From positions 124,001 to 188,000 of IMG/VR virus record IMGVR_UViG_3300034073_003542: a stretch of 64,000 nucleotides of DNA. One strand, written 5' to 3'. Below, one piece after another: positions 18,187 to 51,855 of the stretch. Under the pieces are notes generated by a model. The model searched no databases and was not told the origin of the DNA. It saw only the letters and a list, made by a program, of their open reading frames with translations. The number at the start of each line of letters is the position of its first letter. Within the stretch, counting starts at the first letter, position 1. A program made the translations under genes and the position numbers.

Positions 18187-18460
18187 TTTTTCCTCAATAA
18201 TTAGAAGTGTTATATTCGTCCAAATTAAATATCTGACTCATTGTATCATGCAGCTTATTGATATTTAAACCCAATAAAGCTTTTGTGCCGAGTAAAATAT
18301 TAACTGTTTCATCTTCAGTTAAATTATCTTCTAGTACATTTTCGGCCAAAATATGAAGATTCTCATAAATAGCCCACAAGCTATTAATATCTGTTTCTAA
18401 ATCAAACCGATCTTTCATTGTTGTTCTCCAAGATGTTAGTGTCGATAGCTCGATTATATC

Positions 18461-18835
18461 CTACTGTTGGGGTTTGTCAAGCTGATTTCTGTTTCTAACC
18501 TTTATAAGATAATTCAGGGCATTAATGAGAGAAGGAATATCATCACCCAATTTGCCAAGTCCTTCGTTACACCGACTGCAAACGTGACCACGAAAAGTAT
18601 CGTCTGTATGATCGTGATCTATTACCCATTTCCAAGGAACCTTACCACAAATTTCACACACTTCGGGTCTAGGTGGTGCTTCCTTCTTTAATTTCTTTCT
18701 GACTTTTGCGTGATGCTTGATGCACTCTCTACATCTTGTATCAAGACGATCTTTATAAAGACGATGTTTCGGAAACTCAGAAAGTTTCTTAGTTTCTTTA
18801 CAGTATTGACAAGGTTTTTCTTTTTTGTTTTTCAT
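18461..18835 (-). CDS. Endonuclease VII-family (His-Me) nuclease, probably free-standing homing type
   Basis: N-terminal CxxC...CxxC; CEICG, IDHDH...RGHVCSRCNEGLGKLGDD. Confidence 0.85.
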   Translation of the reverse strand: MKNKKEKPCQYCKETKKLSEFPKHRLYKDRLDTRCRECIKHHAKVRKKLKKEAPPRPEVCEICGKVPWKWVIDHDHTDDTFRGHVCSRCNEGLGKLGDDIPSLINALNYLIKVRNRNQLDKPQQ

Positions 18836-18844
18836 TTTTTGTAT

Positions 18845-19194
18845 TGGTGGAGATGTTGGCATACGATAGCCAAGTCCTAAAAATATTTCAGATAGCTTTT
18901 CTACAAGTTTATTTTGTTCTTTTTAAGAGAAATTATAGAACAAACAACATTCTTTTCTCTTTGCTTGTTTATCTTAGTTTGTTGATACAAGCTTCAACAA
19001 AAGCAAAAGGATTTTACATCAACTTTTTGGACGCCTCCTTTTAGCTTCCTAAAGTTGTCGTAGCCGTTATTAGGCTGCGAGAGCTAATTGATTTACGTCA
19101 ATTAAACGTTTTTATCGACTTGTTAAAGTGGCCTGTCGATAAACCACTACTTGCTTTACTAACCTCTTTATTCTAGTCGAAACCTTTCATCCCC
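18845..19194 (-). ncRNA. ssrA: tmRNA (SsrA), 350 nt
   Basis: 5' GGGGAUGAAAGGUUUCGAC; 3' ...UUGGC-UAUCGUAU-GCCAA-CAUCUCC-A-CCA; acceptor stem with G3-U70; tag ORF (D)VNQLALAA followed by TAA TAA at 19099..19067; dedicated promoter. Confidence 0.95.
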
Positions 19195-19204
19195 GTATGT
19201 TCTT

Positions 19205-19232
19205 ATTATACACCATCAGTTTGGTTTGTCAA
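19205..19232 (-). promoter_or_regulatory. sigma70-type promoter of tmRNA
   Basis: TTGACA-N16-TATAAT about 10 nt upstream of the tmRNA 5' end. Confidence 0.85.
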
Positions 19233-19649
19233 GAAAGAGCTAATTCTATGAGTTTTTGCGCTCTTTTGCTGGGTTTCTTATATCCGTTCTGAAATCCCTT
19301 ACAAATACCATTTTTATACATTTCTTTGATATCAATATCTTTTTTGATCTGATCTATTGTTGGATCTAAAATTTTCCCTTCTTTGTTTACTAACCACCAA
19401 TGAGTTTCAATAACTGGATCGTTAGGTCTATTGACATAAAAATCTATTGGAAAAGATATACATACTGGTTTATATCCAGAATTTTTCCCTCCCAACATAT
19501 GAAATAAGGCTTCTGTAGCAATATAGCAAAAACCAACCGAATGAACATTTTTGTTTTTATTTTGCTCTCTCCAATATGGAGTCAATAACTTTTTTGCTTC
19601 CGGTGTCTTGAATGTTTTTCTAATTAATTTAATGGTCTTTTGTTCTTTT

Positions 19650-19988
19650 TTATTCATTTCTGAAATCCCAAATTTTTAAGCCATATTTTTTTGCTGTCTC
19701 ATACATATTCTTGGTTCCTTTTCCTCCAGGAAACAAAATAACAGCATCAGCATAGTCAGCCATTTCTGCATTACGAATTGGACCAGCGGCCTTTTTGTGC
19801 TTTATCCATTCTGCTGGAAACATTTTTATGGGAATTTGATTTTCTCTCGCCCATCTTTCTCCACAAGCATCAGCACCCTTAGCTCCACCAGAAACAACTT
19901 CGGTAATTTGATCCCTAAGTTGATCTAGTTTAAGTTCATCTGCGTCAGTAAAATAGTAGTCACGACCACCCGCAATAATTACTCGCAT
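19650..19988 (-). CDS. SLOG-family (DUF2493/YspA-like) protein
   Basis: RVIIAGGRDY, VVSGGAKGAD, AAGPIRNAEMA, FPGGKGT.NM. Confidence 0.88.
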   Translation of the reverse strand: MRVIIAGGRDYYFTDADELKLDQLRDQITEVVSGGAKGADACGERWARENQIPIKMFPAEWIKHKKAAGPIRNAEMADYADAVILFPGGKGTKNMYETAKKYGLKIWDFRNE

Positions 19989-20837
19989 GGCATACTCAAA
20001 CATTCTAATTTTAATTGCAATTCATGAAGTTCTCTAGCTACTAATTTCCATCTTGGTGTTACTAGACATATATCTGGAATATAACCATTATAATCCGGCT
20101 CTACTCCATGCTTAATAATTTCTTCTGGATCTAATCCTTTTTTATTACAATATTCTCGTGCTGCTTTTTCTAGTTGTTGATCTGACATAATTTACTCCAT
20201 TTGTTTATATGGTTCCCAACCTTGTAATTTATGATATTGTATATTTGCTTCCACCCAATTATCAGCCCAAATCTCCCATAATAACTCATACTCTCCATCT
20301 TGTACTGCGGCAGTATATTTGGGATGAAGATCTTTCCCTTTAATAAGTAAGAAGCCACCATCTTCTTTTTTGTCTTCCCAAGCGGTATAAAGAGTTTTAT
20401 TGTTATCTGTCATTTTTTATATCTTTTTTAATTTCGTTTAAAGCTTGATTTAGACTAATTAATATTTCATTGCTAGTATCTACTAGATTGTTTGCTCGTT
20501 TTGTTGCTTCTTCAGAAATTTCTTTTAGTTCTAATACGGAGTAACATAATTCTATAACTAATTTCGTTGTGTCATTATTAGTAAAATCTAGCGTCAGTAT
20601 TTCTTGGATACTTTGCTTTGATATGCTTTCGTTTTCTATTAAGGTTATAAGTTTCTTTTTTACTTCTCCATTAATCAGCTGTTTATATGGAGATTTAGTA
20701 AGCATCTTTAATATTTGGTTTATAGAAGGAATATATTTTTGATTAGTGGTCATTTTTAGTCCTTATGGTCTGGGACACAAAGTTTTATGCTCTTCTTTGG
20801 AAAAACAGTGAAATTTGTTTCAAAGGTTAGATTCATT

Positions 20838-24358: not shown

Positions 24359-25297
24359 TTAAACTGTTTCGACTGCATTATATTTTTCTCCATAATCTTT
24401 TAGGAATTGAGATATAGCCACGTTTTTTTGCTTGAACTCATAGTCTATGGTTGCTGGTAACAAAAATAGCTCTTCGTGAAGCTCATAAACATAATCTGAA
24501 TGAGCTTTGTCTGTAGGAGATGCTTTGCCATTACTAAAGTGCATAACTGGCGTAATATCTCGCCATGTTTCATAACACATTACCATAGCAGTCTCAGGAT
24601 CAATACCAACATTATTTAGTCGATGATGGTGAGAATCGTATGTTATGGGAATTTGTGTAGCAGGATGGAAAATCTCTACTAATTCTTGTACATTCCAACA
24701 ATTAGGTTTGTCGTCAATTTCGATAGTAATGCGCGATTTACAATTATCGTGCAATTGGTCAAAAGATTTGAGAAATCGCCCAATAATTTCTTCGTGGGAG
24801 CCTTGCTTGTTATTGATATGAAAGTTAATGGGCGAATTATGATTAGTTGGAAGTCCGATGCGGTCGAAAAACCAACTATAGAAATTTAGTTCTTGAATAG
24901 AGTTCTTGACGGCATTTTCATTAGTAGATGCTAATACCACATAAGGACTCGGGTGGTTTGAAATTCTAACACTAGATTGCTCGATTGTTGATTTGATATT
25001 AGTAAATTCATTATCAATATCGTTATAATTAGGCAAATCTTCTAGCTTAACATTAGCTTCGTCCATTGTGATAAGGGGAAACAGAGAAGAAGAACAACGA
25101 TAATCCCAACCTAATTGATCGCACGTTTGAATAATTTTGGTAGTTACTTTGAGATTATTAAGAATTCGCCCACCTAATATTGCTAGGGCATCTTGTCTAG
25201 GTAAAGCTGAAAATCTAGAAAATGTCATTGTCTGGAACTCGTATCCAGATTTCTTTTTATCTGCCAAATAAATACAGCATAGAGAAGGTTTGTTCAT
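24359..25297 (-). CDS. uvsE: UV-damage endonuclease UvsE/UvdE
   Basis: YRCSSSLFP, RISNHP..YVVLAS, SIQEL, IEIDD, PITYDSHHH, TW...P.MHFS, AHSDYV, DYEFKQKNVA. Confidence 0.9.
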   Translation of the reverse strand: MNKPSLCCIYLADKKKSGYEFQTMTFSRFSALPRQDALAILGGRILNNLKVTTKIIQTCDQLGWDYRCSSSLFPLITMDEANVKLEDLPNYNDIDNEFTNIKSTIEQSSVRISNHPSPYVVLASTNENAVKNSIQELNFYSWFFDRIGLPTNHNSPINFHINNKQGSHEEIIGRFLKSFDQLHDNCKSRITIEIDDKPNCWNVQELVEIFHPATQIPITYDSHHHRLNNVGIDPETAMVMCYETWRDITPVMHFSNGKASPTDKAHSDYVYELHEELFLLPATIDYEFKQKNVAISQFLKDYGEKYNAVETV

Positions 25298-40118: not shown

Positions 40119-40987
40119 TATTTATATTCCTTATAACATTTATTGTTAGCTATTGAATTAATTATTCCATGACTGATATTATAGTCCTTAGCTATATGTC
40201 TATGTGTTTCTTTTCCTTTAGATAGTCTTTTTCTTATTTCTTTAACTTGTGTAAGATTTAATTTTCTTTGACTTAATAAATATTGTTCATATTTTATTCT
40301 TTGTTTTATTATCTTATCAAAATTTTTCTTTTTTCTTTTTAGGAATATTGTTGCGTCCTTATACATAAAATCCATTAGTTTTTTAATTTCTTTGTACCCA
40401 TATAATCTAATATCGCAAGTATAAGTGTTTTGTTTGGTTTTTTTATATTTTACCATAAAAGAAGATATATTTAATTTTCTTTTAAAGAACCTTAATAAAT
40501 ATTCACTAAAGTCACTATTAGAAATAATCATAAAGGTATATTTATTTTGATTTTTACTCTTCGTAACAGATATACCTCCATCACCATCAAAATATCCTCT
40601 TATAAAGTGATGAATTAAATTTTTAGGTATGTGTCTGTATGGAAATTTTAAGGTATAACTTTTTTGATTATCTAATCCCTTATTAATTAAGTGATTAGTA
40701 AAAATTTCTCCGTATATTTTGATATATTTATATTTACTTTGTTTATTTTTGTTGTTTGGAGTATAATGTTTCGAATCTCCTATTTTCCCAGAATATTTTG
40801 TGTACTTTTTAAAGTAACGCAATATCTCTATATCTCTAGCCTGTAATTCAATTTGAACGTACTTATTACTTTTCTTAGTAGAGATATGACCATCTGCACA
40901 TATAAATCCAAATAAATACGCTTTATCTTCTGTATCTATGACTTTAAAATAATCGTGATCTTTATTATGTATATGTTTATTATTCAT
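40118..40987 (-). mobile_element. Free-standing LAGLIDADG homing endonuclease
   Basis: AYLFGFICADG and HFIRGYFDGDG; C-terminal HTH. Confidence 0.88.
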
Positions 40988-42005
40988 TTTCTTTTAGCAG
41001 AAAGTTATTGTTGATGACTTTAAAACTTATATCTGAATCTTTACTTCTAACAACTATCCCCTCTGCTTGTTGTTGTGGAGAAGCGTTTGGAAAGAAGTCT
41101 TTATATTTTATGTCGGATAAAGTAAATAGCTCATTAATTGTATATTTAAAATTATCTCCTTGTTCGATAATTGGAACAAATTTAAGTTCTATTCTCTTTA
41201 TAATATCTAACGCATCGTCAATTGGTAGCTTTTTATTTGTTTCAATATCTACAACGTTGAATATATAGATGTCTGGTTCTGTTACCTTCATCTTATTTCC
41301 TTGTATATTTCCAATTACCTCTCCCTGAATAGCTACTTTAAATCCATCTTGATGTAATTTTCTAAGCTTATTTTCTATGTCATACTTCTCGCTTAGTTTC
41401 CAGAACATATGGTCGGGTTTTTCTTTGTATGAATAATTTCGCCCACAAACATGATAATCTCCCGCTGCATCAATTAAAAATGTGGATGATGTACCATCCA
41501 GCTTTAATGATATATAGTATGGGCGACCCCAAAGAGCCTCGATAAAACGATACTTGTCGTTATTCTGAACTCTTTCTTCGTCTGTCTTAGAAATAGGCCA
41601 ACTAAATCCGCCCTTAACATCTCCTTGAATAGCTGTTGGTACTGGTGGTTCATATTTTTCTATTCCTAGAAACTCTGTAACATCAGCACCTTCAACCGCT
41701 AAACCTATTTCTGGGAATTTATCTATAGGCATAGCAACGCCTTGGGATAAGACTTTTTTTAATTTTATGCTCTTGAGTCTATACTTGTTGATACCATCAC
41801 GCCAGCAGGATTTTTTAAGAAATTCGTAGCGAGGCTCGTCTGGCAATAGGCTGTCTATCTCAAAAAACAAACAGAGGTCGTCTACATTAAATTCATCTTT
41901 CTTGACAACGCATTGCCAATCAAGAATCTTAGCAAGAACAATCTGATCTGCCACCTCAATAGGAAGAATTTCTTTGATTTTTTGTATTGATGCTAGCTGA
42001 CGCAT
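40980..42005 (-). CDS. ATP-dependent RNA ligase (DRB0094/Rnl2-like)
   Basis: RQLASIQKI...ADQI..A.ILDWQCVVKK, KLDGTS, VCGRN, IQGEV, EGIVVR, FKVINNNFLLK. Confidence 0.92.
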   Translation of the reverse strand: MRQLASIQKIKEILPIEVADQIVLAKILDWQCVVKKDEFNVDDLCLFFEIDSLLPDEPRYEFLKKSCWRDGINKYRLKSIKLKKVLSQGVAMPIDKFPEIGLAVEGADVTEFLGIEKYEPPVPTAIQGDVKGGFSWPISKTDEERVQNNDKYRFIEALWGRPYYISLKLDGTSSTFLIDAAGDYHVCGRNYSYKEKPDHMFWKLSEKYDIENKLRKLHQDGFKVAIQGEVIGNIQGNKMKVTEPDIYIFNVVDIETNKKLPIDDALDIIKRIELKFVPIIEQGDNFKYTINELFTLSDIKYKDFFPNASPQQQAEGIVVRSKDSDISFKVINNNFLLKENE

Positions 42006-44230: not shown

Positions 44231-45076
44231 ATGAAAAAAACAAAGAAATGTAAACAGTGTGGAAAAAGAAAATCTATAGACAAATACTATAAACACAAGA
44301 CTTGTAAAGATGGATATAGAGATATTTGTAAGATATGTATTAATAAATTATCTAAAGAATATGTAGAGAAAAATAAAGAAAAAATTGCCCAACGACAAAA
44401 AAAATATAGAGAAAAAAATAAAGAAAAGCTTTCTCAACAAAGAAAAGACTATAGAGAGAAAAATAAAGAAAAGGTCAAAAAACAAAAACAGGCCAACTAT
44501 TTAAAACACAAAAATAAGACATTACAAAAAAGTAAAGAATATAAAGAAAAACTTAAAAAAGAAAATCCAGAAAAATTAAAATTATGGCGAAAAAATTATT
44601 GTATTAGACATAAAAATAAATTAAAAGAATATAAGCGAAACTATCACCAAAAAAACAAAGTAAAAATAAGAAATATAAGGAATAAATATAGAAAATATAA
44701 ATACGATTCAGATATTGGATATAGAATGCAAGAGAATATTAGGAGTAGAATGAGATATCTCTTGAAAGGATATTATAAAAGTAAAGCCACACTAGAATTA
44801 TTAGGATGTTCGGACGATCAACTTAAAAAACATCTAGAAAAACAATTTGAGCCAAGTATGACTTGGGATAATTACGGATATTATGGGTGGCATATTGACC
44901 ATATCAGACCATGTTCTAGTTTTGATTTATCTGATCTAGAACAACAAAAACAGTGCTTTCATTATACGAATTTACAGCCATTATGGGCAAAAGACAATTA
45001 TATTAAAGGTAATAAGATACCTATTTCTTCCAGTGATGATCTTCATGGCCTGCCATTAAACACCCATACGGAATAA
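44231..45076 (+). mobile_element. HNH homing endonuclease (inverted orientation)
   Basis: CKQC...CKIC, Lys-rich helical repeats, WHIDHIRPC...CFHYTNLQPLWAKDN; start placed at MKKTKK. Confidence 0.85.
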
Positions 45077-46409
45077 TTTCATCCACTATATTTCCAAGAT
45101 TAAATTTTTGGATTTGGTTCTTTACTTTTTCAGCATTTTTATAAGCAGATGGAAGTTCTGTTATATCCATTTTTCCTGTGTAGAATCTTACATCTAGACC
45201 CCTAGTATCTTCATCAAACAATTCATATCCTGTTTTGTTTTGTAGAGATATTTTAGTGTATTCAGTTCTACTCATTTCGCGGCCAGCACCATGACTTGTA
45301 AAACCTAAATTAGTTTCGGTTTCTTCTCCATTAACAATAAGAATACCATCTCTCATATTAAGAGGTATTAATCTTAGACCATTAGTTGAGTCAGGAACAA
45401 ATTCATTTAATAATGGTGTTGCTCCTTTGGCATGGATGTAAGTATTATCTTTTTTAAACACAAAATTATGTTCATTCCAATAATTGTCATGTATATTTAC
45501 ATTAATTTTACTAGCAATTTCCGTATGAATAAGCGTATGATTTAGCTTTGTCCATTCTCTAACTACTTGTAAAGCGTTCCAATATGTAACACCTTCTTCT
45601 GTGTCCATTGGAATCCAGCCTAAATTATCATTAACGTTTGGAGCTATTTCTTTACGAAACTTCTCAGCTATGTCATTTCCCTTCTTGAATAATAAAGCTC
45701 CGAAAGAGCGACTGCCATGATGAGTAACTAATACTGTTTCTCCAGAGCTTTTTAAGTAGCCTACAAATAGGAAATGGTTGCCGTTTCCTTGAGTTCTTAA
45801 ATCTTTTTGGGCTTTATCTAGACTTTTTTCTCCAGATAAATATAGATTGTTAAGAATATCGTTCTTTAAAGGTTCTGGTATAATATCTTTTGGATTTTGT
45901 CTTCCACCAGCACCAAAATGTGTTATTTTTTCTGCTTTATCTAGGACAATTTTTGGATCTATTTTTCCTAGATTAGAAAACATAACTGAACAACATACGT
46001 CGGCACTGTGAAATTTTGGGTGGATTGCATTTAAAGTTTGTATGACTCCACCCACAGGAATATCAAACTCGCCCGTAGGGCAAGCGTCAGGCATCACAGC
46101 AGCATTTATAGCGGTTGGAGCCACCAAAATATTGTGCATAGCCCGCGTGACCGAAAACATATTGTTAACTTCGGCCTCATTTTTTGGGTCGATTTCTATA
46201 TTGCAATGAAAATTGATTGGTTCATCCCTTGGTTCCATTGTTTTTGGTGGAAGAGGAACAAAACGTGTCTGAATTTCGTTATACAGATTTTCTTCGCTGT
46301 ACTTGTCTCGATTTTGATTTGCCCACTCAATAGCTGACTTAAACCATTTCCCAGGGGTAAAACCCATACTGATTAAAGATTGACCAGTAATTGACATCAT
46401 ACACCTCAC
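45021..46409 (-). CDS. rtcB: RtcB-family RNA 2',3'-cyclic phosphate ligase
   Basis: VMPDACP, IPVGG, ADVCC, GNGNHF, THHGSR, HN, HAKGATP, SHGAGR.MSR, ELPSAYK. Confidence 0.93.
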   Translation of the reverse strand: MRCMMSITGQSLISMGFTPGKWFKSAIEWANQNRDKYSEENLYNEIQTRFVPLPPKTMEPRDEPINFHCNIEIDPKNEAEVNNMFSVTRAMHNILVAPTAINAAVMPDACPTGEFDIPVGGVIQTLNAIHPKFHSADVCCSVMFSNLGKIDPKIVLDKAEKITHFGAGGRQNPKDIIPEPLKNDILNNLYLSGEKSLDKAQKDLRTQGNGNHFLFVGYLKSSGETVLVTHHGSRSFGALLFKKGNDIAEKFRKEIAPNVNDNLGWIPMDTEEGVTYWNALQVVREWTKLNHTLIHTEIASKINVNIHDNYWNEHNFVFKKDNTYIHAKGATPLLNEFVPDSTNGLRLIPLNMRDGILIVNGEETETNLGFTSHGAGREMSRTEYTKISLQNKTGYELFDEDTRGLDVRFYTGKMDITELPSAYKNAEKVKNQIQKFNLGNIVDEIIPYGCLMAGHEDHHWKK

Positions 46410-51783: not shown

Positions 51784-51855
51784 AGACCGCAGTTGGAATC
51801 GAACCAACAAATGCTGTTTTGCAGACAGCCACCAACGCCAATTGATTTTGCGGCC
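51784..51855 (-). tRNA. tRNA-Cys(GCA)
   Basis: GGCCGCA/TGCGGTC acceptor stem, GCTGT-CTGCAAA-ACAGC anticodon arm, GTTGG-TTCGATT-CCAAC T-arm, U73 discriminator; no encoded CCA; promoter at 51882..51909. Confidence 0.92.

What the first reader, a model, noticed from the sequence alone, without database searches (positions are those of the whole stretch)
18845..19232. Complete phage tmRNA with tag DVNQLALAA and an atypical T-loop
Seen: a 350-nt RNA with an Ala-type acceptor stem (G3-U70, A73, encoded CCA), a tag ending in LAA with a double stop, and its own promoter. The T-arm loop is 8 nt (UAUCGUAU) instead of the 7-nt UUCRANY. Established: tmRNA rescues stalled ribosomes and -LAA tags target ClpXP; some large phages carry ssrA. 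Inference: it sustains translation when host defences cleave mRNA or tRNA; the odd T-loop may alter SmpB/EF-Tu binding or evade host nucleases.
Basis: partly seen in the sequence, partly recalled or inferred. Interest (0 to 1): 0.6.

Follow-up and report, generated by a model that had tools for sequence, protein, structure and literature searches.

The report
Phage tmRNA with a remodelled T-arm
A 210-kb T4-like phage carries a complete ribosome-rescue RNA (tmRNA) whose T-loop has eight bases instead of seven, and the same kind of loop marks about 137 other virus-borne tmRNA genes that the standard finder program cannot see.

Summary
Rfam RF00023 matches window 19194..18845 (minus strand) end to end at 96.9 bits (cut-off 47). 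The acceptor stem has G3-U70, A73 and an encoded CCA. PK1 precedes the resume codon GAC, and the tag is DVNQLALAA followed by UAA UAA. A perfect TTGACA-16-TATAAT promoter lies just upstream. The T-loop really is 8 nt (UAUCGUAU), and that alone makes ARAGORN miss the gene.

The loop is not a one-off. The same loop occurs in 71 IMG/VR viral contigs. Related loops (UCUCGGAU, UUUCGAAG and others) occur in 66 more, in both one-piece and permuted tmRNA genes. In every case loop positions 2 and 6 form a Watson-Crick pair (A-U, C-G or U-A), the stem closes with C-G or U-A rather than G-C, and the D region is 12 nt rather than 13-14.

I read this as a T-arm lengthened by one base pair, capped by a UCG triloop, and matched to a shortened D-loop.

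A scan of 185,579 prokaryote species found one true case, on a phage-like MAG contig. That scan required an encoded CCA.

The phage has no SmpB, EF-Tu or AlaRS, so the RNA must use host factors. Why phages favour this elbow is unknown. I found no expression data and could not infer the host.

The parts
19205..19232 (-). Sigma70-type promoter: TTGACA (19232-19227), 16-nt spacer, TATAAT (19210-19205). G1 of the tmRNA lies 10 nt after the -10 hexamer. The stop codon of the upstream gene overlaps the -35 hexamer.
   Evidence: 12/12 consensus match. It is one of 26 perfect sites on the coding strand of the genome, against 2 on the other strand.
18845..19194 (-). Mature one-piece tmRNA (ssrA), 350 nt
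   Evidence: RF00023 at 96.9 bits, model 1-374, E 1.5e-36. The minimum-energy fold keeps the acceptor stem and T arm, z -3.2.
19176..19194 (-). Acceptor 5' strand GGGGAUG (19194-19188) and the 12-nt D region AAAGGUUUCGAC (19187-19176)
   Evidence: Read. The D region is 12 nt, as in 105 of 112 tmRNAs with this loop class, against 13-14 nt in most canonical viral tmRNAs.
19113..19148 (-). Pseudoknot PK1: stem 1 pairs RNA 47-51 with 64-68 (5 bp); stem 2 pairs RNA 54-60 with 76-82 (7 bp)
   Evidence: Rfam alignment structure line and direct reading.
19067..19099 (-). Tag reading frame: resume codon GAC (19099-19097), DVNQLALAA to 19073, then stops TAA TAA (19072-19067)
   Evidence: ARAGORN's call after the diagnostic loop edit. 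The Rfam alignment puts GAC where the consensus has the resume codon.
18856..18873 (-). T arm: stem UUGGC/GCCAA and the 8-nt loop UAUCGUAU (18868-18861). Proposed reading: U1-A7 and A2-U6 pairs, a UCG triloop and a bulged U8.
   Evidence: Direct reading. Family covariation.
18845..18855 (-). Acceptor 3' strand CAUCUCC (18855-18849), discriminator A (18848), encoded CCA (18847-18845)
   Evidence: Direct reading.
18461..18835 (-). EndoVII/HNH-type endonuclease gene starting 10 nt after the CCA. Probably a free-standing homing-type gene. The likely start is the ATG at 18835, not the in-frame ATG at 18862 inside the T-loop.
   Evidence: PF02945 E 3.4e-11; phrog_2633 E 7e-25. ORF list.
19229..19657 (-). 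Upstream gene of unknown function (phrog_12251)

Best explanation
This is a working one-piece tmRNA gene of a distant T4-like jumbo phage.

Shown by the sequence: all the sequence-level features needed for trans-translation, apart from the standard T-loop, are present. These are an alanine-identity acceptor stem with encoded CCA, the D-region GG, PK1, a resume codon, a 9-codon tag ending in LAA, and two stops. A consensus sigma70 promoter of the type this phage uses 26 times sits upstream.

Inferred course of action:
1. Host RNA polymerase transcribes the gene early in infection.
2. Host RNase P and 3' exonucleases trim the transcript.
3. Host AlaRS charges it, and host SmpB and EF-Tu deliver it to ribosomes stalled on broken messages.
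4. The ribosome adds A-DVNQLALAA and terminates.
5. Host ClpXP-type proteases remove the tagged products.
The phage has no SmpB, EF-Tu or AlaRS of its own.

The 8-nt T-loop is a designed-in variant, not damage. My inference from covariation is as follows. The 5-bp stem closes with C-G. On it stack a U-A pair (the 54-58 equivalent) and one extra Watson-Crick pair. A UCG triloop (the psi55-C56-R57 equivalent) caps the arm, and one base is bulged instead of two. The arm is thus one pair longer, and the D region is one or two bases shorter, which would keep the D-loop/T-loop contact that SmpB needs.

This design recurs in about 137 viral contigs, in both standard and permuted tmRNA genes. It was not found on any bacterial chromosome searched.

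Why phages prefer it is not known. My leading guess is that it sets the phage tmRNA apart from host tRNA and tmRNA for some factor that reads the canonical elbow.
For: Identity of the RNA:
- RF00023 at 96.9 bits, full length.
- Direct reading of the acceptor stem, G3-U, A73, CCA, PK1, tag and stops.
- ARAGORN gives the same tag once one loop base is removed.
- 12/12 promoter, one of 26 on the coding strand.

Phage setting:
- Viral record of 209,847 bp, CheckV 100%.
- RIIA, RIIB, ligase, EndoVII, RtcB and Rnl; 25 tRNAs.
- No SmpB, EF-Tu or AlaRS.

The loop is selected, not accidental:
- UAUCGUAU sits between covarying stems in 44 (with CCA) or 71 (without the CCA requirement) viral contigs.
- 15 of 16 loci tested are tmRNAs above the Rfam cut-off, 8 standard and 7 permuted.
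- The full census finds 137 viral contigs with seven loop variants. Loop positions 2 and 6 are Watson-Crick in 138/138 (137 viral contigs plus the MAG contig L049), although position 6 was left free in the pattern.
- Pair counting gives 100% paired and a covariation score of 0.671, against 0.150 in shuffles.
- Related tmRNA bodies carry different 2-6 pairs (L072 against L066).

Coupling to the D region:
- 12 nt in 32/33 unique UAUCGUAU tmRNAs, against 11/68 canonical ones; Fisher p about 8e-16, not corrected for relatedness.
- A related phage (56% ligase identity) carries a tmRNA with a 7-nt loop and a 14-nt D region. Its PK1 and tag are homologous to 8-nt-loop tmRNAs.

Virus restriction:
- Only 2 pattern hits in 185,579 prokaryote species. 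One is not a tmRNA. The other lies on a 7.2-kb MAG contig with an endolysin, an HNH gene and a phage exonuclease, and that MAG has its own canonical tmRNA.
- None in 400 further Bacteroidota genomes with the CCA-free pattern.

Literature: D-loop/T-loop contacts are needed for SmpB binding, and SmpB binds the elbow (PMC3968760).
Against: - There is no expression, processing, charging or tagging evidence.
- The only other copy of this particular tmRNA is a 100% identical record of the same phage, so its PK2-PK4 region has no comparative support. The Rfam alignment there has low posterior values and several non-standard pairs.
- The whole-collection bacterial scan demanded an encoded CCA, so lineages whose ssrA lacks it were covered only by a 400-genome sample of one phylum.
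- The T stems in the counted alignment were selected for complementarity, and the loop class was recognised after the fact. The pair statistics therefore lean towards the proposed structure. The free position 6 is the fairest test.
- A C-G pair at the proposed extra step shows Watson-Crick geometry, but nothing here shows the 3D fold.
- The host is unknown.
Confidence: 0.75

Rival explanations
1. The loop reflects DNA-level selection, not RNA function. The canonical T-loop-to-CCA stretch of ssrA is a favoured target of integrases and of group I introns with homing endonucleases. On this view the 8-nt allele is a cleavage- or integration-immune version that travels with neighbouring free-standing HNH/EndoVII genes, while the RNA merely tolerates it.
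For: - An EndoVII-type gene starts 10 nt after the CCA.
- A phrog_3322 HNH gene abuts the tmRNA on L049.
- HNH/EndoVII-like genes lie within 1.5 kb of the T arm in 30/137 loci of this class, against 1/111 canonical-loop viral loci.
- Introns occupy four T-loop positions in bacterial tmRNA genes, and islands often integrate into ssrA (PMC11915505).
Against: - The comparison is biased. The queries came from this phage, 23 of the 30 positives belong to one clade, and many canonical loci are probably prophage borders.
- Immunity alone does not explain the strict 2-6 covariation, the flipped closing pair, or the matching change in the D region. These are constraints at the RNA level.
Confidence: 0.15
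2. The RNA is a decoy or inhibitor of host trans-translation. The altered elbow lets it soak up SmpB, AlaRS or ribosomes without productive tagging, as reported for the tag-less tRNA-like form in mycobacteriophage DS6A.
For: - The T-arm departs from the canonical form and the phage brings no SmpB.
- A phage tmRNA-like RNA that inhibits endogenous tmRNA is on record (PMC11915505).
Against: - PK1, the resume codon, a 9-codon frame ending in LAA and a double stop are all intact.
- Other members of the loop class also keep typical degradation tags such as ANDETWALAA.
- The D-loop change looks compensatory rather than disruptive.
Confidence: 0.07
3. The gene is a decaying copy captured from a host, and the extra loop base is a lesion or an assembly error.
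For: ARAGORN rejects it. The PK2-PK4 alignment is weak.
Against: - The identical loop occurs in 71 contigs with covarying stems, and six sister loops keep the same architecture.
- The gene has a perfect promoter and an intact tag frame.
Confidence: 0.03
4. The loop simply copies the host's own tmRNA. On this view an unsampled bacterial lineage, or one whose ssrA lacks an encoded CCA, has this T-arm, and the phages picked it up from there.
For: - The whole-collection bacterial scan required an encoded CCA.
- One Bacteroidota tmRNA checked lacks an encoded CCA.
- A 25-contig viral group with this loop also lacks an encoded CCA.
Against: - There was no chromosomal instance in 185,579 species with the CCA pattern, and none in 400 Bacteroidota without it.
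- The class spans standard and permuted genes with very different tags, so many hosts would be needed.
- The loop form switches within one phage tmRNA lineage.
Confidence: 0.1

Closest known systems
Bacterial one-piece tmRNA (ssrA, Rfam RF00023)
   Same: Full-length covariance-model match, G3-U70/A73/CCA acceptor, D-region GG, PK1, resume codon, a tag ending in LAA, and stop codons.
   Different: The T-loop is 8 nt, not 7. The stem closes with C-G instead of G53-C61. The D region is 12 nt. The RNA is short (350 nt) and AT-rich with a weak PK2-PK4 match. It is encoded by a virus that has no smpB.
Known phage-encoded tmRNAs (79 in the 2025 tmRNA database, 402 phages in a 2021 survey, huge phages, the two-piece tmRNA of OM43 phage Melnitz)
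   Same: A phage carrying ssrA next to many tRNAs. Both standard and permuted forms occur in aquatic phages (PMC11915505, PMC9004378, PMC7162821).
   Different: Those surveys identified tmRNAs with ARAGORN, or with ARAGORN plus BLAST to earlier entries. ARAGORN calls none of the 73 loci I tested that match the UAUCGUAU pattern, 72 of which are true members of the class. No BLAST match to GenBank phages was found for this tmRNA or for two other members. None of the papers I read or searched mentions an 8-nt T-loop.
tmRNA genes with a group I intron in the T-loop
   Same: A departure from the plain gene form located in the T-loop (PMC11915505).
   Different: Here a single extra base is retained in the mature RNA. 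There is no intron, and the loop has its own conserved architecture.
Free-standing homing endonuclease genes beside tRNA genes in T4-like phages (own knowledge: SegB in the T4 tRNA region)
   Same: An EndoVII/HNH gene lies directly beside the RNA gene.
   Different: No cleavage site or homing behaviour is known here. The association was measured only crudely.

Membership tests
tmRNA (RF00023) | Covariance-model score above the curated gathering score, full length | tested here: met
   96.9 bits against 47, model 1-374, E 1.5e-36
tmRNA (RF00023) | 7-bp acceptor stem with G3-U70, discriminator A73 and a 3' CCA (alanine identity) | tested here: met
   GGGGAUG/CAUCUCC with G3 opposite U, then A, then an encoded CCA
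tmRNA (RF00023) | T arm with a 5-bp stem and a 7-nt T-psi-C loop | tested here: not met
   The 5-bp stem is present, but the loop is 8 nt (UAUCGUAU) and the closing pair is C-G. ARAGORN fails for this reason alone. This is a departure in one feature, shared by a whole class of Rfam-positive tmRNAs.
tmRNA (RF00023) | Stem-less D region with a GG and a UUCGAC-like motif | tested here: met
   AAAGGUUUCGAC, 12 nt, one or two bases shorter than usual
tmRNA (RF00023) | Pseudoknot PK1 just upstream of the resume codon | tested here: met
   RNA 47-51/64-68 and 54-60/76-82, all Watson-Crick
tmRNA (RF00023) | Internal tag frame without a start codon, with a hydrophobic C-terminus and a stop | tested here: met
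   GAC resume codon, DVNQLALAA, UAA UAA
tmRNA (RF00023) | Pseudoknots PK2-PK4 downstream of the tag | tested here: inconclusive
   The region aligns with low posterior values and several non-standard pairs. There are no diverged orthologues to test covariation.
tmRNA (RF00023) | Works with SmpB, is alanylated, and tags stalled products | not testable with these tools
   No smpB in the phage. The host is unknown.
Viral tmRNAs with an extended T arm (class defined here) | Pyrimidine-purine closing pair, loop U-N-UCG-N'-A-N with N-N' Watson-Crick | tested here: met
   C-G closing pair and U-A-UCG-U-A-U. The class shows 138/138 Watson-Crick at positions 2-6.
Viral tmRNAs with an extended T arm (class defined here) | D region of 12 nt | tested here: met
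   12 nt here; 105/112 in the class
Viral tmRNAs with an extended T arm (class defined here) | Encoded on viral, not bacterial chromosomal, DNA | tested here: met
   Viral record with T4-like genes. The class-wide claim is limited by the CCA requirement.

The most novel reading that the evidence does not exclude
Phages maintain their own structural class of tmRNA. Its elbow is rebuilt: the T arm is one base pair longer, it carries a UCG triloop, and the D-loop is shortened to match. The class spans one-piece and two-piece genes and many unrelated phages, is absent from bacterial chromosomes, and is invisible to ARAGORN-based surveys. If so, the canonical tRNA elbow is something phages gain by avoiding in their tmRNA, for example to escape a host or rival-element factor that reads it. 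It would also mean phage tmRNA counts to date are underestimates.
Probability: 0.45. Interest if true: 0.7.

Novelty: new variant of a known kind. Interest (0 to 1): 0.6.

Why it matters
Phage tmRNAs are known, so the gene itself is not a surprise. Three things are new here.

1. A sequence rule (U-N-UCG-N'-A-N between a C-G or U-A closing pair, with a 12-nt D region) picks out about 137 viral tmRNA genes and essentially no bacterial ones. This suggests selection specific to life in a phage.
2. The rule gives a natural experiment on the D-loop/T-loop contact that SmpB depends on. The loop form switches inside a single tmRNA lineage.
3. There is a practical consequence. ARAGORN is the tool used in the huge-phage and phage-database surveys and in the main tmRNA database pipeline. 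It returns nothing for any of the 72 members tested, so phage trans-translation genes are being under-counted.

All of this rests on sequence comparison only.

Tried and rejected
I did not try another route.
- Close relatives in GenBank phages: blastn with the tmRNA, with 12 kb around it, and with two other class members found nothing.
- Orthologues of this particular tmRNA:
  - The only hit, L012/L304, is a 100% identical record of the same phage.
  - A back-translated tag pattern found only that record.
  - The ligase neighbour search found one relative, G402, whose tmRNA sits elsewhere and has a canonical loop.
- Phage-encoded partners: no SmpB, EF-Tu or AlaRS.
- Gp23 and GOLLD searches of the genome were blank, but their controls rang nowhere, so they say nothing.
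- Host inference:
  - RIIA hits are all below 40% identity.
  - The nearest clusters to UvdE are viral.
  - Only a sigma70/Shine-Dalgarno host type can be stated.
- Supplementary files of the tmRNA database paper hold no sequences. Mao et al. 2009 is not held.
- General T-loop nuclease evasion was considered and marked down, because the phage's own tRNAs keep canonical loops.
- An assembly error was rejected because of the class-wide conservation.
- The metagenome scan was not used.

Full report
**1. The observation**

Rfam's covariance model for tmRNA (RF00023) matches window 19194..18845 on the minus strand over its whole length, at 96.9 bits against a gathering score of 47 and E 1.5e-36. 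A search of the whole genome gives the same place.

- The acceptor stem is GGGGAUG/CAUCUCC, with G3 opposite U.
- The discriminator is A, and CCA is encoded.
- The D region is AAAGGUUUCGAC.
- PK1 is a clean H-type pseudoknot: RNA 47-51 pairs with 64-68, and RNA 54-60 pairs with 76-82.
- The frame GAC GUA AAU CAA UUA GCU CUC GCA GCC UAA UAA gives DVNQLALAA plus two stops.
- The T arm is UUGGC-UAUCGUAU-GCCAA.

The promoter is a 12/12 consensus site, TTGACA-16-TATAAT, at 19232-19205. It ends 10 nt before G1. No intrinsic terminator follows the gene. The minimum-energy fold keeps the acceptor stem and the T arm (z -3.2).

ARAGORN finds no tmRNA in the window or the genome, even at relaxed thresholds. 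When loop base 1 or 2 is removed in silico, or the loop is replaced by a canonical one, it calls a 349-nt tmRNA with exactly this tag. The eighth loop base is therefore the only reason the standard finder misses the gene.

**2. The setting**

The window is positions 124001-188000 of a 209,847-bp IMG/VR viral record that CheckV rates complete.

Genes near the tmRNA are T4-like:
- RIIA, RIIB and an ATP-dependent DNA ligase.
- An EndoVII/HNH gene that starts 10 nt after the CCA.
- UvdE, RtcB and an Rnl-type RNA ligase.

RIIA is under 40% identical to anything in GenBank phages, so this is a distant T4-like jumbo phage.

The genome has 25 tRNA genes, 24 of them in one cluster outside the window. 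ARAGORN calls all 25 with its standard 7-nt T-loop, and 23 carry the TTCRA motif. The genome has no SmpB, EF-Tu or AlaRS.

Twenty-six perfect TTGACA-N16-18-TATAAT sites lie on the coding strand, against two on the other strand. About half of the ORFs have a Shine-Dalgarno-like motif upstream, against 10% in the background. The host therefore uses sigma70-type promoters and SD-led initiation. I could not narrow it further.

**3. The loop is not unique**

The pattern GGAC-N5-TATCGTAT-N8-CTCCACCA finds 44 IMG/VR contigs. Dropping the CCA requirement raises this to 71.

- The stems around the invariant loop covary freely. Nine stem pairs were already seen in the first 44 contigs.
- Of 16 loci put through Rfam, 15 are tmRNAs above the cut-off. 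Eight are standard, and seven are circularly permuted two-piece genes. The sixteenth, from a Geobacteraceae MAG, is a chance match.
- ARAGORN calls none of the 73 pattern-matching loci natively. It of them after the one-base diagnostic edit, with ordinary tags such as ANDETWALAA, ANDEKYALAA and ANDYSYAVAA.
- Apart from L012, which is a 100% identical record of the same phage, these contigs share almost no proteins with this phage.

**4. Anatomy of the loop class**

A wider scan showed further 8-nt loops between perfect 5-bp stems. They fall into two groups.

The group that includes this gene has these features:
- The stem closes with C-G or U-A, not the usual G-C.
- The loop reads U-N-UCG-N'-A-N.

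A complete scan for that frame, with N' left free, gave this census of viral contigs:

| Loop | Viral contigs |
|---|---|
| UAUCGUAU | 71 |
| UCUCGGAU | 36 |
| UUUCGAAG | 18 |
| UUUCGAAU | 7 |
| UUUCGAAA | 2 |
| UAUCGUAG | 2 |
| UCUCGGAG | 1 |
| Total | 137 |

Counting the MAG contig L049 as well gives 138 members. In all 138, N and N' form a Watson-Crick pair (A-U, C-G or U-A). The 35 pattern hits without a perfect stem look like chance.

On an alignment of 38 distinct T arms, the seven proposed pairs are 100% paired. The covariation score is 0.671 against 0.150 in shuffles, and it collapses when the partner is slid. The stems were selected for pairing and the class was recognised after the fact, so the free N' is the fairest evidence.

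Related tmRNA bodies carry different N-N' pairs. L072 has C-G and L066 has U-A, at 79% identity over 285 nt. That is a compensatory change.

My reading, which is an inference:
- The U-A pair is the counterpart of the 54-58 pair.
- An extra Watson-Crick pair is stacked on it.
- UCG stands for psi55-C56-R57.
- One bulged base replaces the usual two.

**5. A matching change in the D region**

I measured the D region from nucleotide 8 to the end of the UUCGAC-like motif.
- It is 12 nt in 32 of 33 unique UAUCGUAU tmRNAs, and in 105 of 112 members of the whole class.
- Viral tmRNAs with 7-nt loops mostly have 13-14 nt; only 11 of 68 have 12 nt.
- Fisher's test gives p about 8e-16. It is not corrected for relatedness.

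The nearest relative found through the ligase is a 172-kb phage, G402, with 56% identity. It has a tmRNA at another genomic position, with a canonical UUCGACU loop and a 14-nt D region. Its PK1 and its long tag are nevertheless clearly homologous to those of the 8-nt-loop tmRNAs L023, L010 and L007. Loop form and D length therefore change together within one tmRNA lineage.

[quoted passage not shown] This makes a compensated pair of changes plausible.

**6. Distribution**

The CCA-containing pattern found two hits in one genome for each of 185,579 prokaryote species.
- One hit is not a tmRNA.
- The other, L049, is a 7.2-kb contig of a Bacteroidetes MAG. The contig carries an endolysin, an HNH gene abutting the tmRNA, a phage exonuclease and 2OG oxygenases. 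The MAG also has its own canonical tmRNA at 147 bits.

So I found no chromosomal bacterial instance.

The caveat matters. The scan demanded an encoded CCA. The MAG's own tmRNA lacks one, and so does a 25-contig viral group with this loop. A CCA-free pattern found nothing in 400 further Bacteroidota genomes. I could not repeat that check across all phyla.

**7. Function**

Apart from the 7-nt T-loop, the gene has every sequence feature of a working tmRNA. It is under a promoter of the kind this phage uses repeatedly.

The most likely account is ordinary trans-translation run on host SmpB, EF-Tu, AlaRS and proteases. This would keep ribosomes free while messages are being broken during infection. 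The RtcB and Rnl genes and the large tRNA set fit a phage that invests in keeping translation going. That is context, not proof.

The canonical T-loops of the phage's tRNAs argue against a general T-loop nuclease as the driver.

A DNA-level alternative is immunity to the homing endonucleases, introns or integrases that target the canonical ssrA 3' end. It has some support from neighbouring HNH/EndoVII genes: 30/137 loci against 1/111. That comparison is biased, and the alternative does not explain the RNA-level covariation.

**8. Comparison with what is known**

Phage tmRNAs, both one-piece and two-piece, are well documented (PMC11915505, PMC9004378, PMC7162821). Those surveys relied on ARAGORN, or on ARAGORN plus BLAST to earlier entries.

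I found no mention of an 8-nt T-loop in tmRNA in the held library. The library is incomplete, and Mao et al. 2009 could not be read.

I file this gene as a tmRNA that departs in one defining feature. It is a member of a class, probably undescribed, of virus-borne tmRNAs with an extended T arm.

**9. Limits**

- This particular tmRNA has no diverged orthologue.
- The host is unknown.
- The bacterial census is incomplete for CCA-less genes.
- The statistics are not corrected for phylogeny.

Noticed in passing
window 45024-46409 (-) and 40983-42005 (-): RtcB tRNA-splicing ligase and an Rnl-type RNA ligase with the PHA02142 OB domain, in the same 64-kb window as the tmRNA. This is an RNA-repair set. 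Rnl homologues also sit near the tmRNA in L007, L016, L023, L024 and L030.
   Followed up: partly
L004:6914-7296 (+): A GOLLD RNA (RF02032, 280 bits) lies about 2.5 kb from an 8-nt-loop tmRNA and between tRNA genes on a 10-kb freshwater viral contig. The search for GOLLD in this phage's own genome was uninformative.
   Followed up: no
whole genome G000:C1, e.g. window 18453-18480 (-): There are 26 perfect TTGACA-N16-18-TATAAT sites on the coding strand against 2 on the other strand. A second one lies only 750 nt downstream of the tmRNA promoter. They look like a T4-style early promoter set.
   Followed up: partly
window 51784-51855 (-); G000:C1:203300-205998: A lone tRNA-Cys lies in the window, far from the 24-tRNA cluster near the genome end.
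   Followed up: no
L006, L010, L023, L030, L047; L306:1501-1939 (-): One phage tmRNA lineage encodes unusually long tags (25-40 residues) that share a conserved motif, roughly AE-x-IFNN-x-D, before the ALAA/VAA end. The motif occurs in both the 8-nt and 7-nt loop forms. A conserved internal tag motif suggests a function beyond a degradation signal.
   Followed up: no
L274-L299 (sample 3300045988): About 25 viral contigs of 50-195 kb from one sample carry the UAUCGUAU loop with a 3' end CTCCA-CTA (no encoded CCA). Where resolvable they have a permuted layout and tags like GNTSYVMDYTGIAA. Most have a phrog_3322-like HNH gene nearby.
   Followed up: partly
L306:1501-1939 (-): The tmRNA of the related 172-kb phage scores 99.5 bits in Rfam and has a canonical 7-nt loop, yet ARAGORN misses it too. 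ARAGORN's blind spot for phage tmRNAs is therefore wider than the 8-nt loop.
   Followed up: no
8-nt loops AGUCGGAG, CUUCGAUG etc. (e.g. L050-L149): A second group of 8-nt T-loops in viral tmRNAs keeps the canonical G-C closing pair and a 13-nt D region. It does not fit the U-N-UCG-N'-A-N rule.
   Followed up: no
window 19653-20003 (-) and 24362-25297 (-): A YAcAr/SLOG-family protein lies two genes upstream of the tmRNA. A UvdE UV-damage endonuclease lies further on, and its nearest Atlas clusters are viral.
   Followed up: no
G001:C502:70-405 (L268): The Bacteroidetes MAG holding L049 has a third tmRNA (95.5 bits, 7-nt loop) on a 1.9-kb contig, besides its 147-bit chromosomal-looking one. This is probably another viral or mis-binned fragment.
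   Followed up: no
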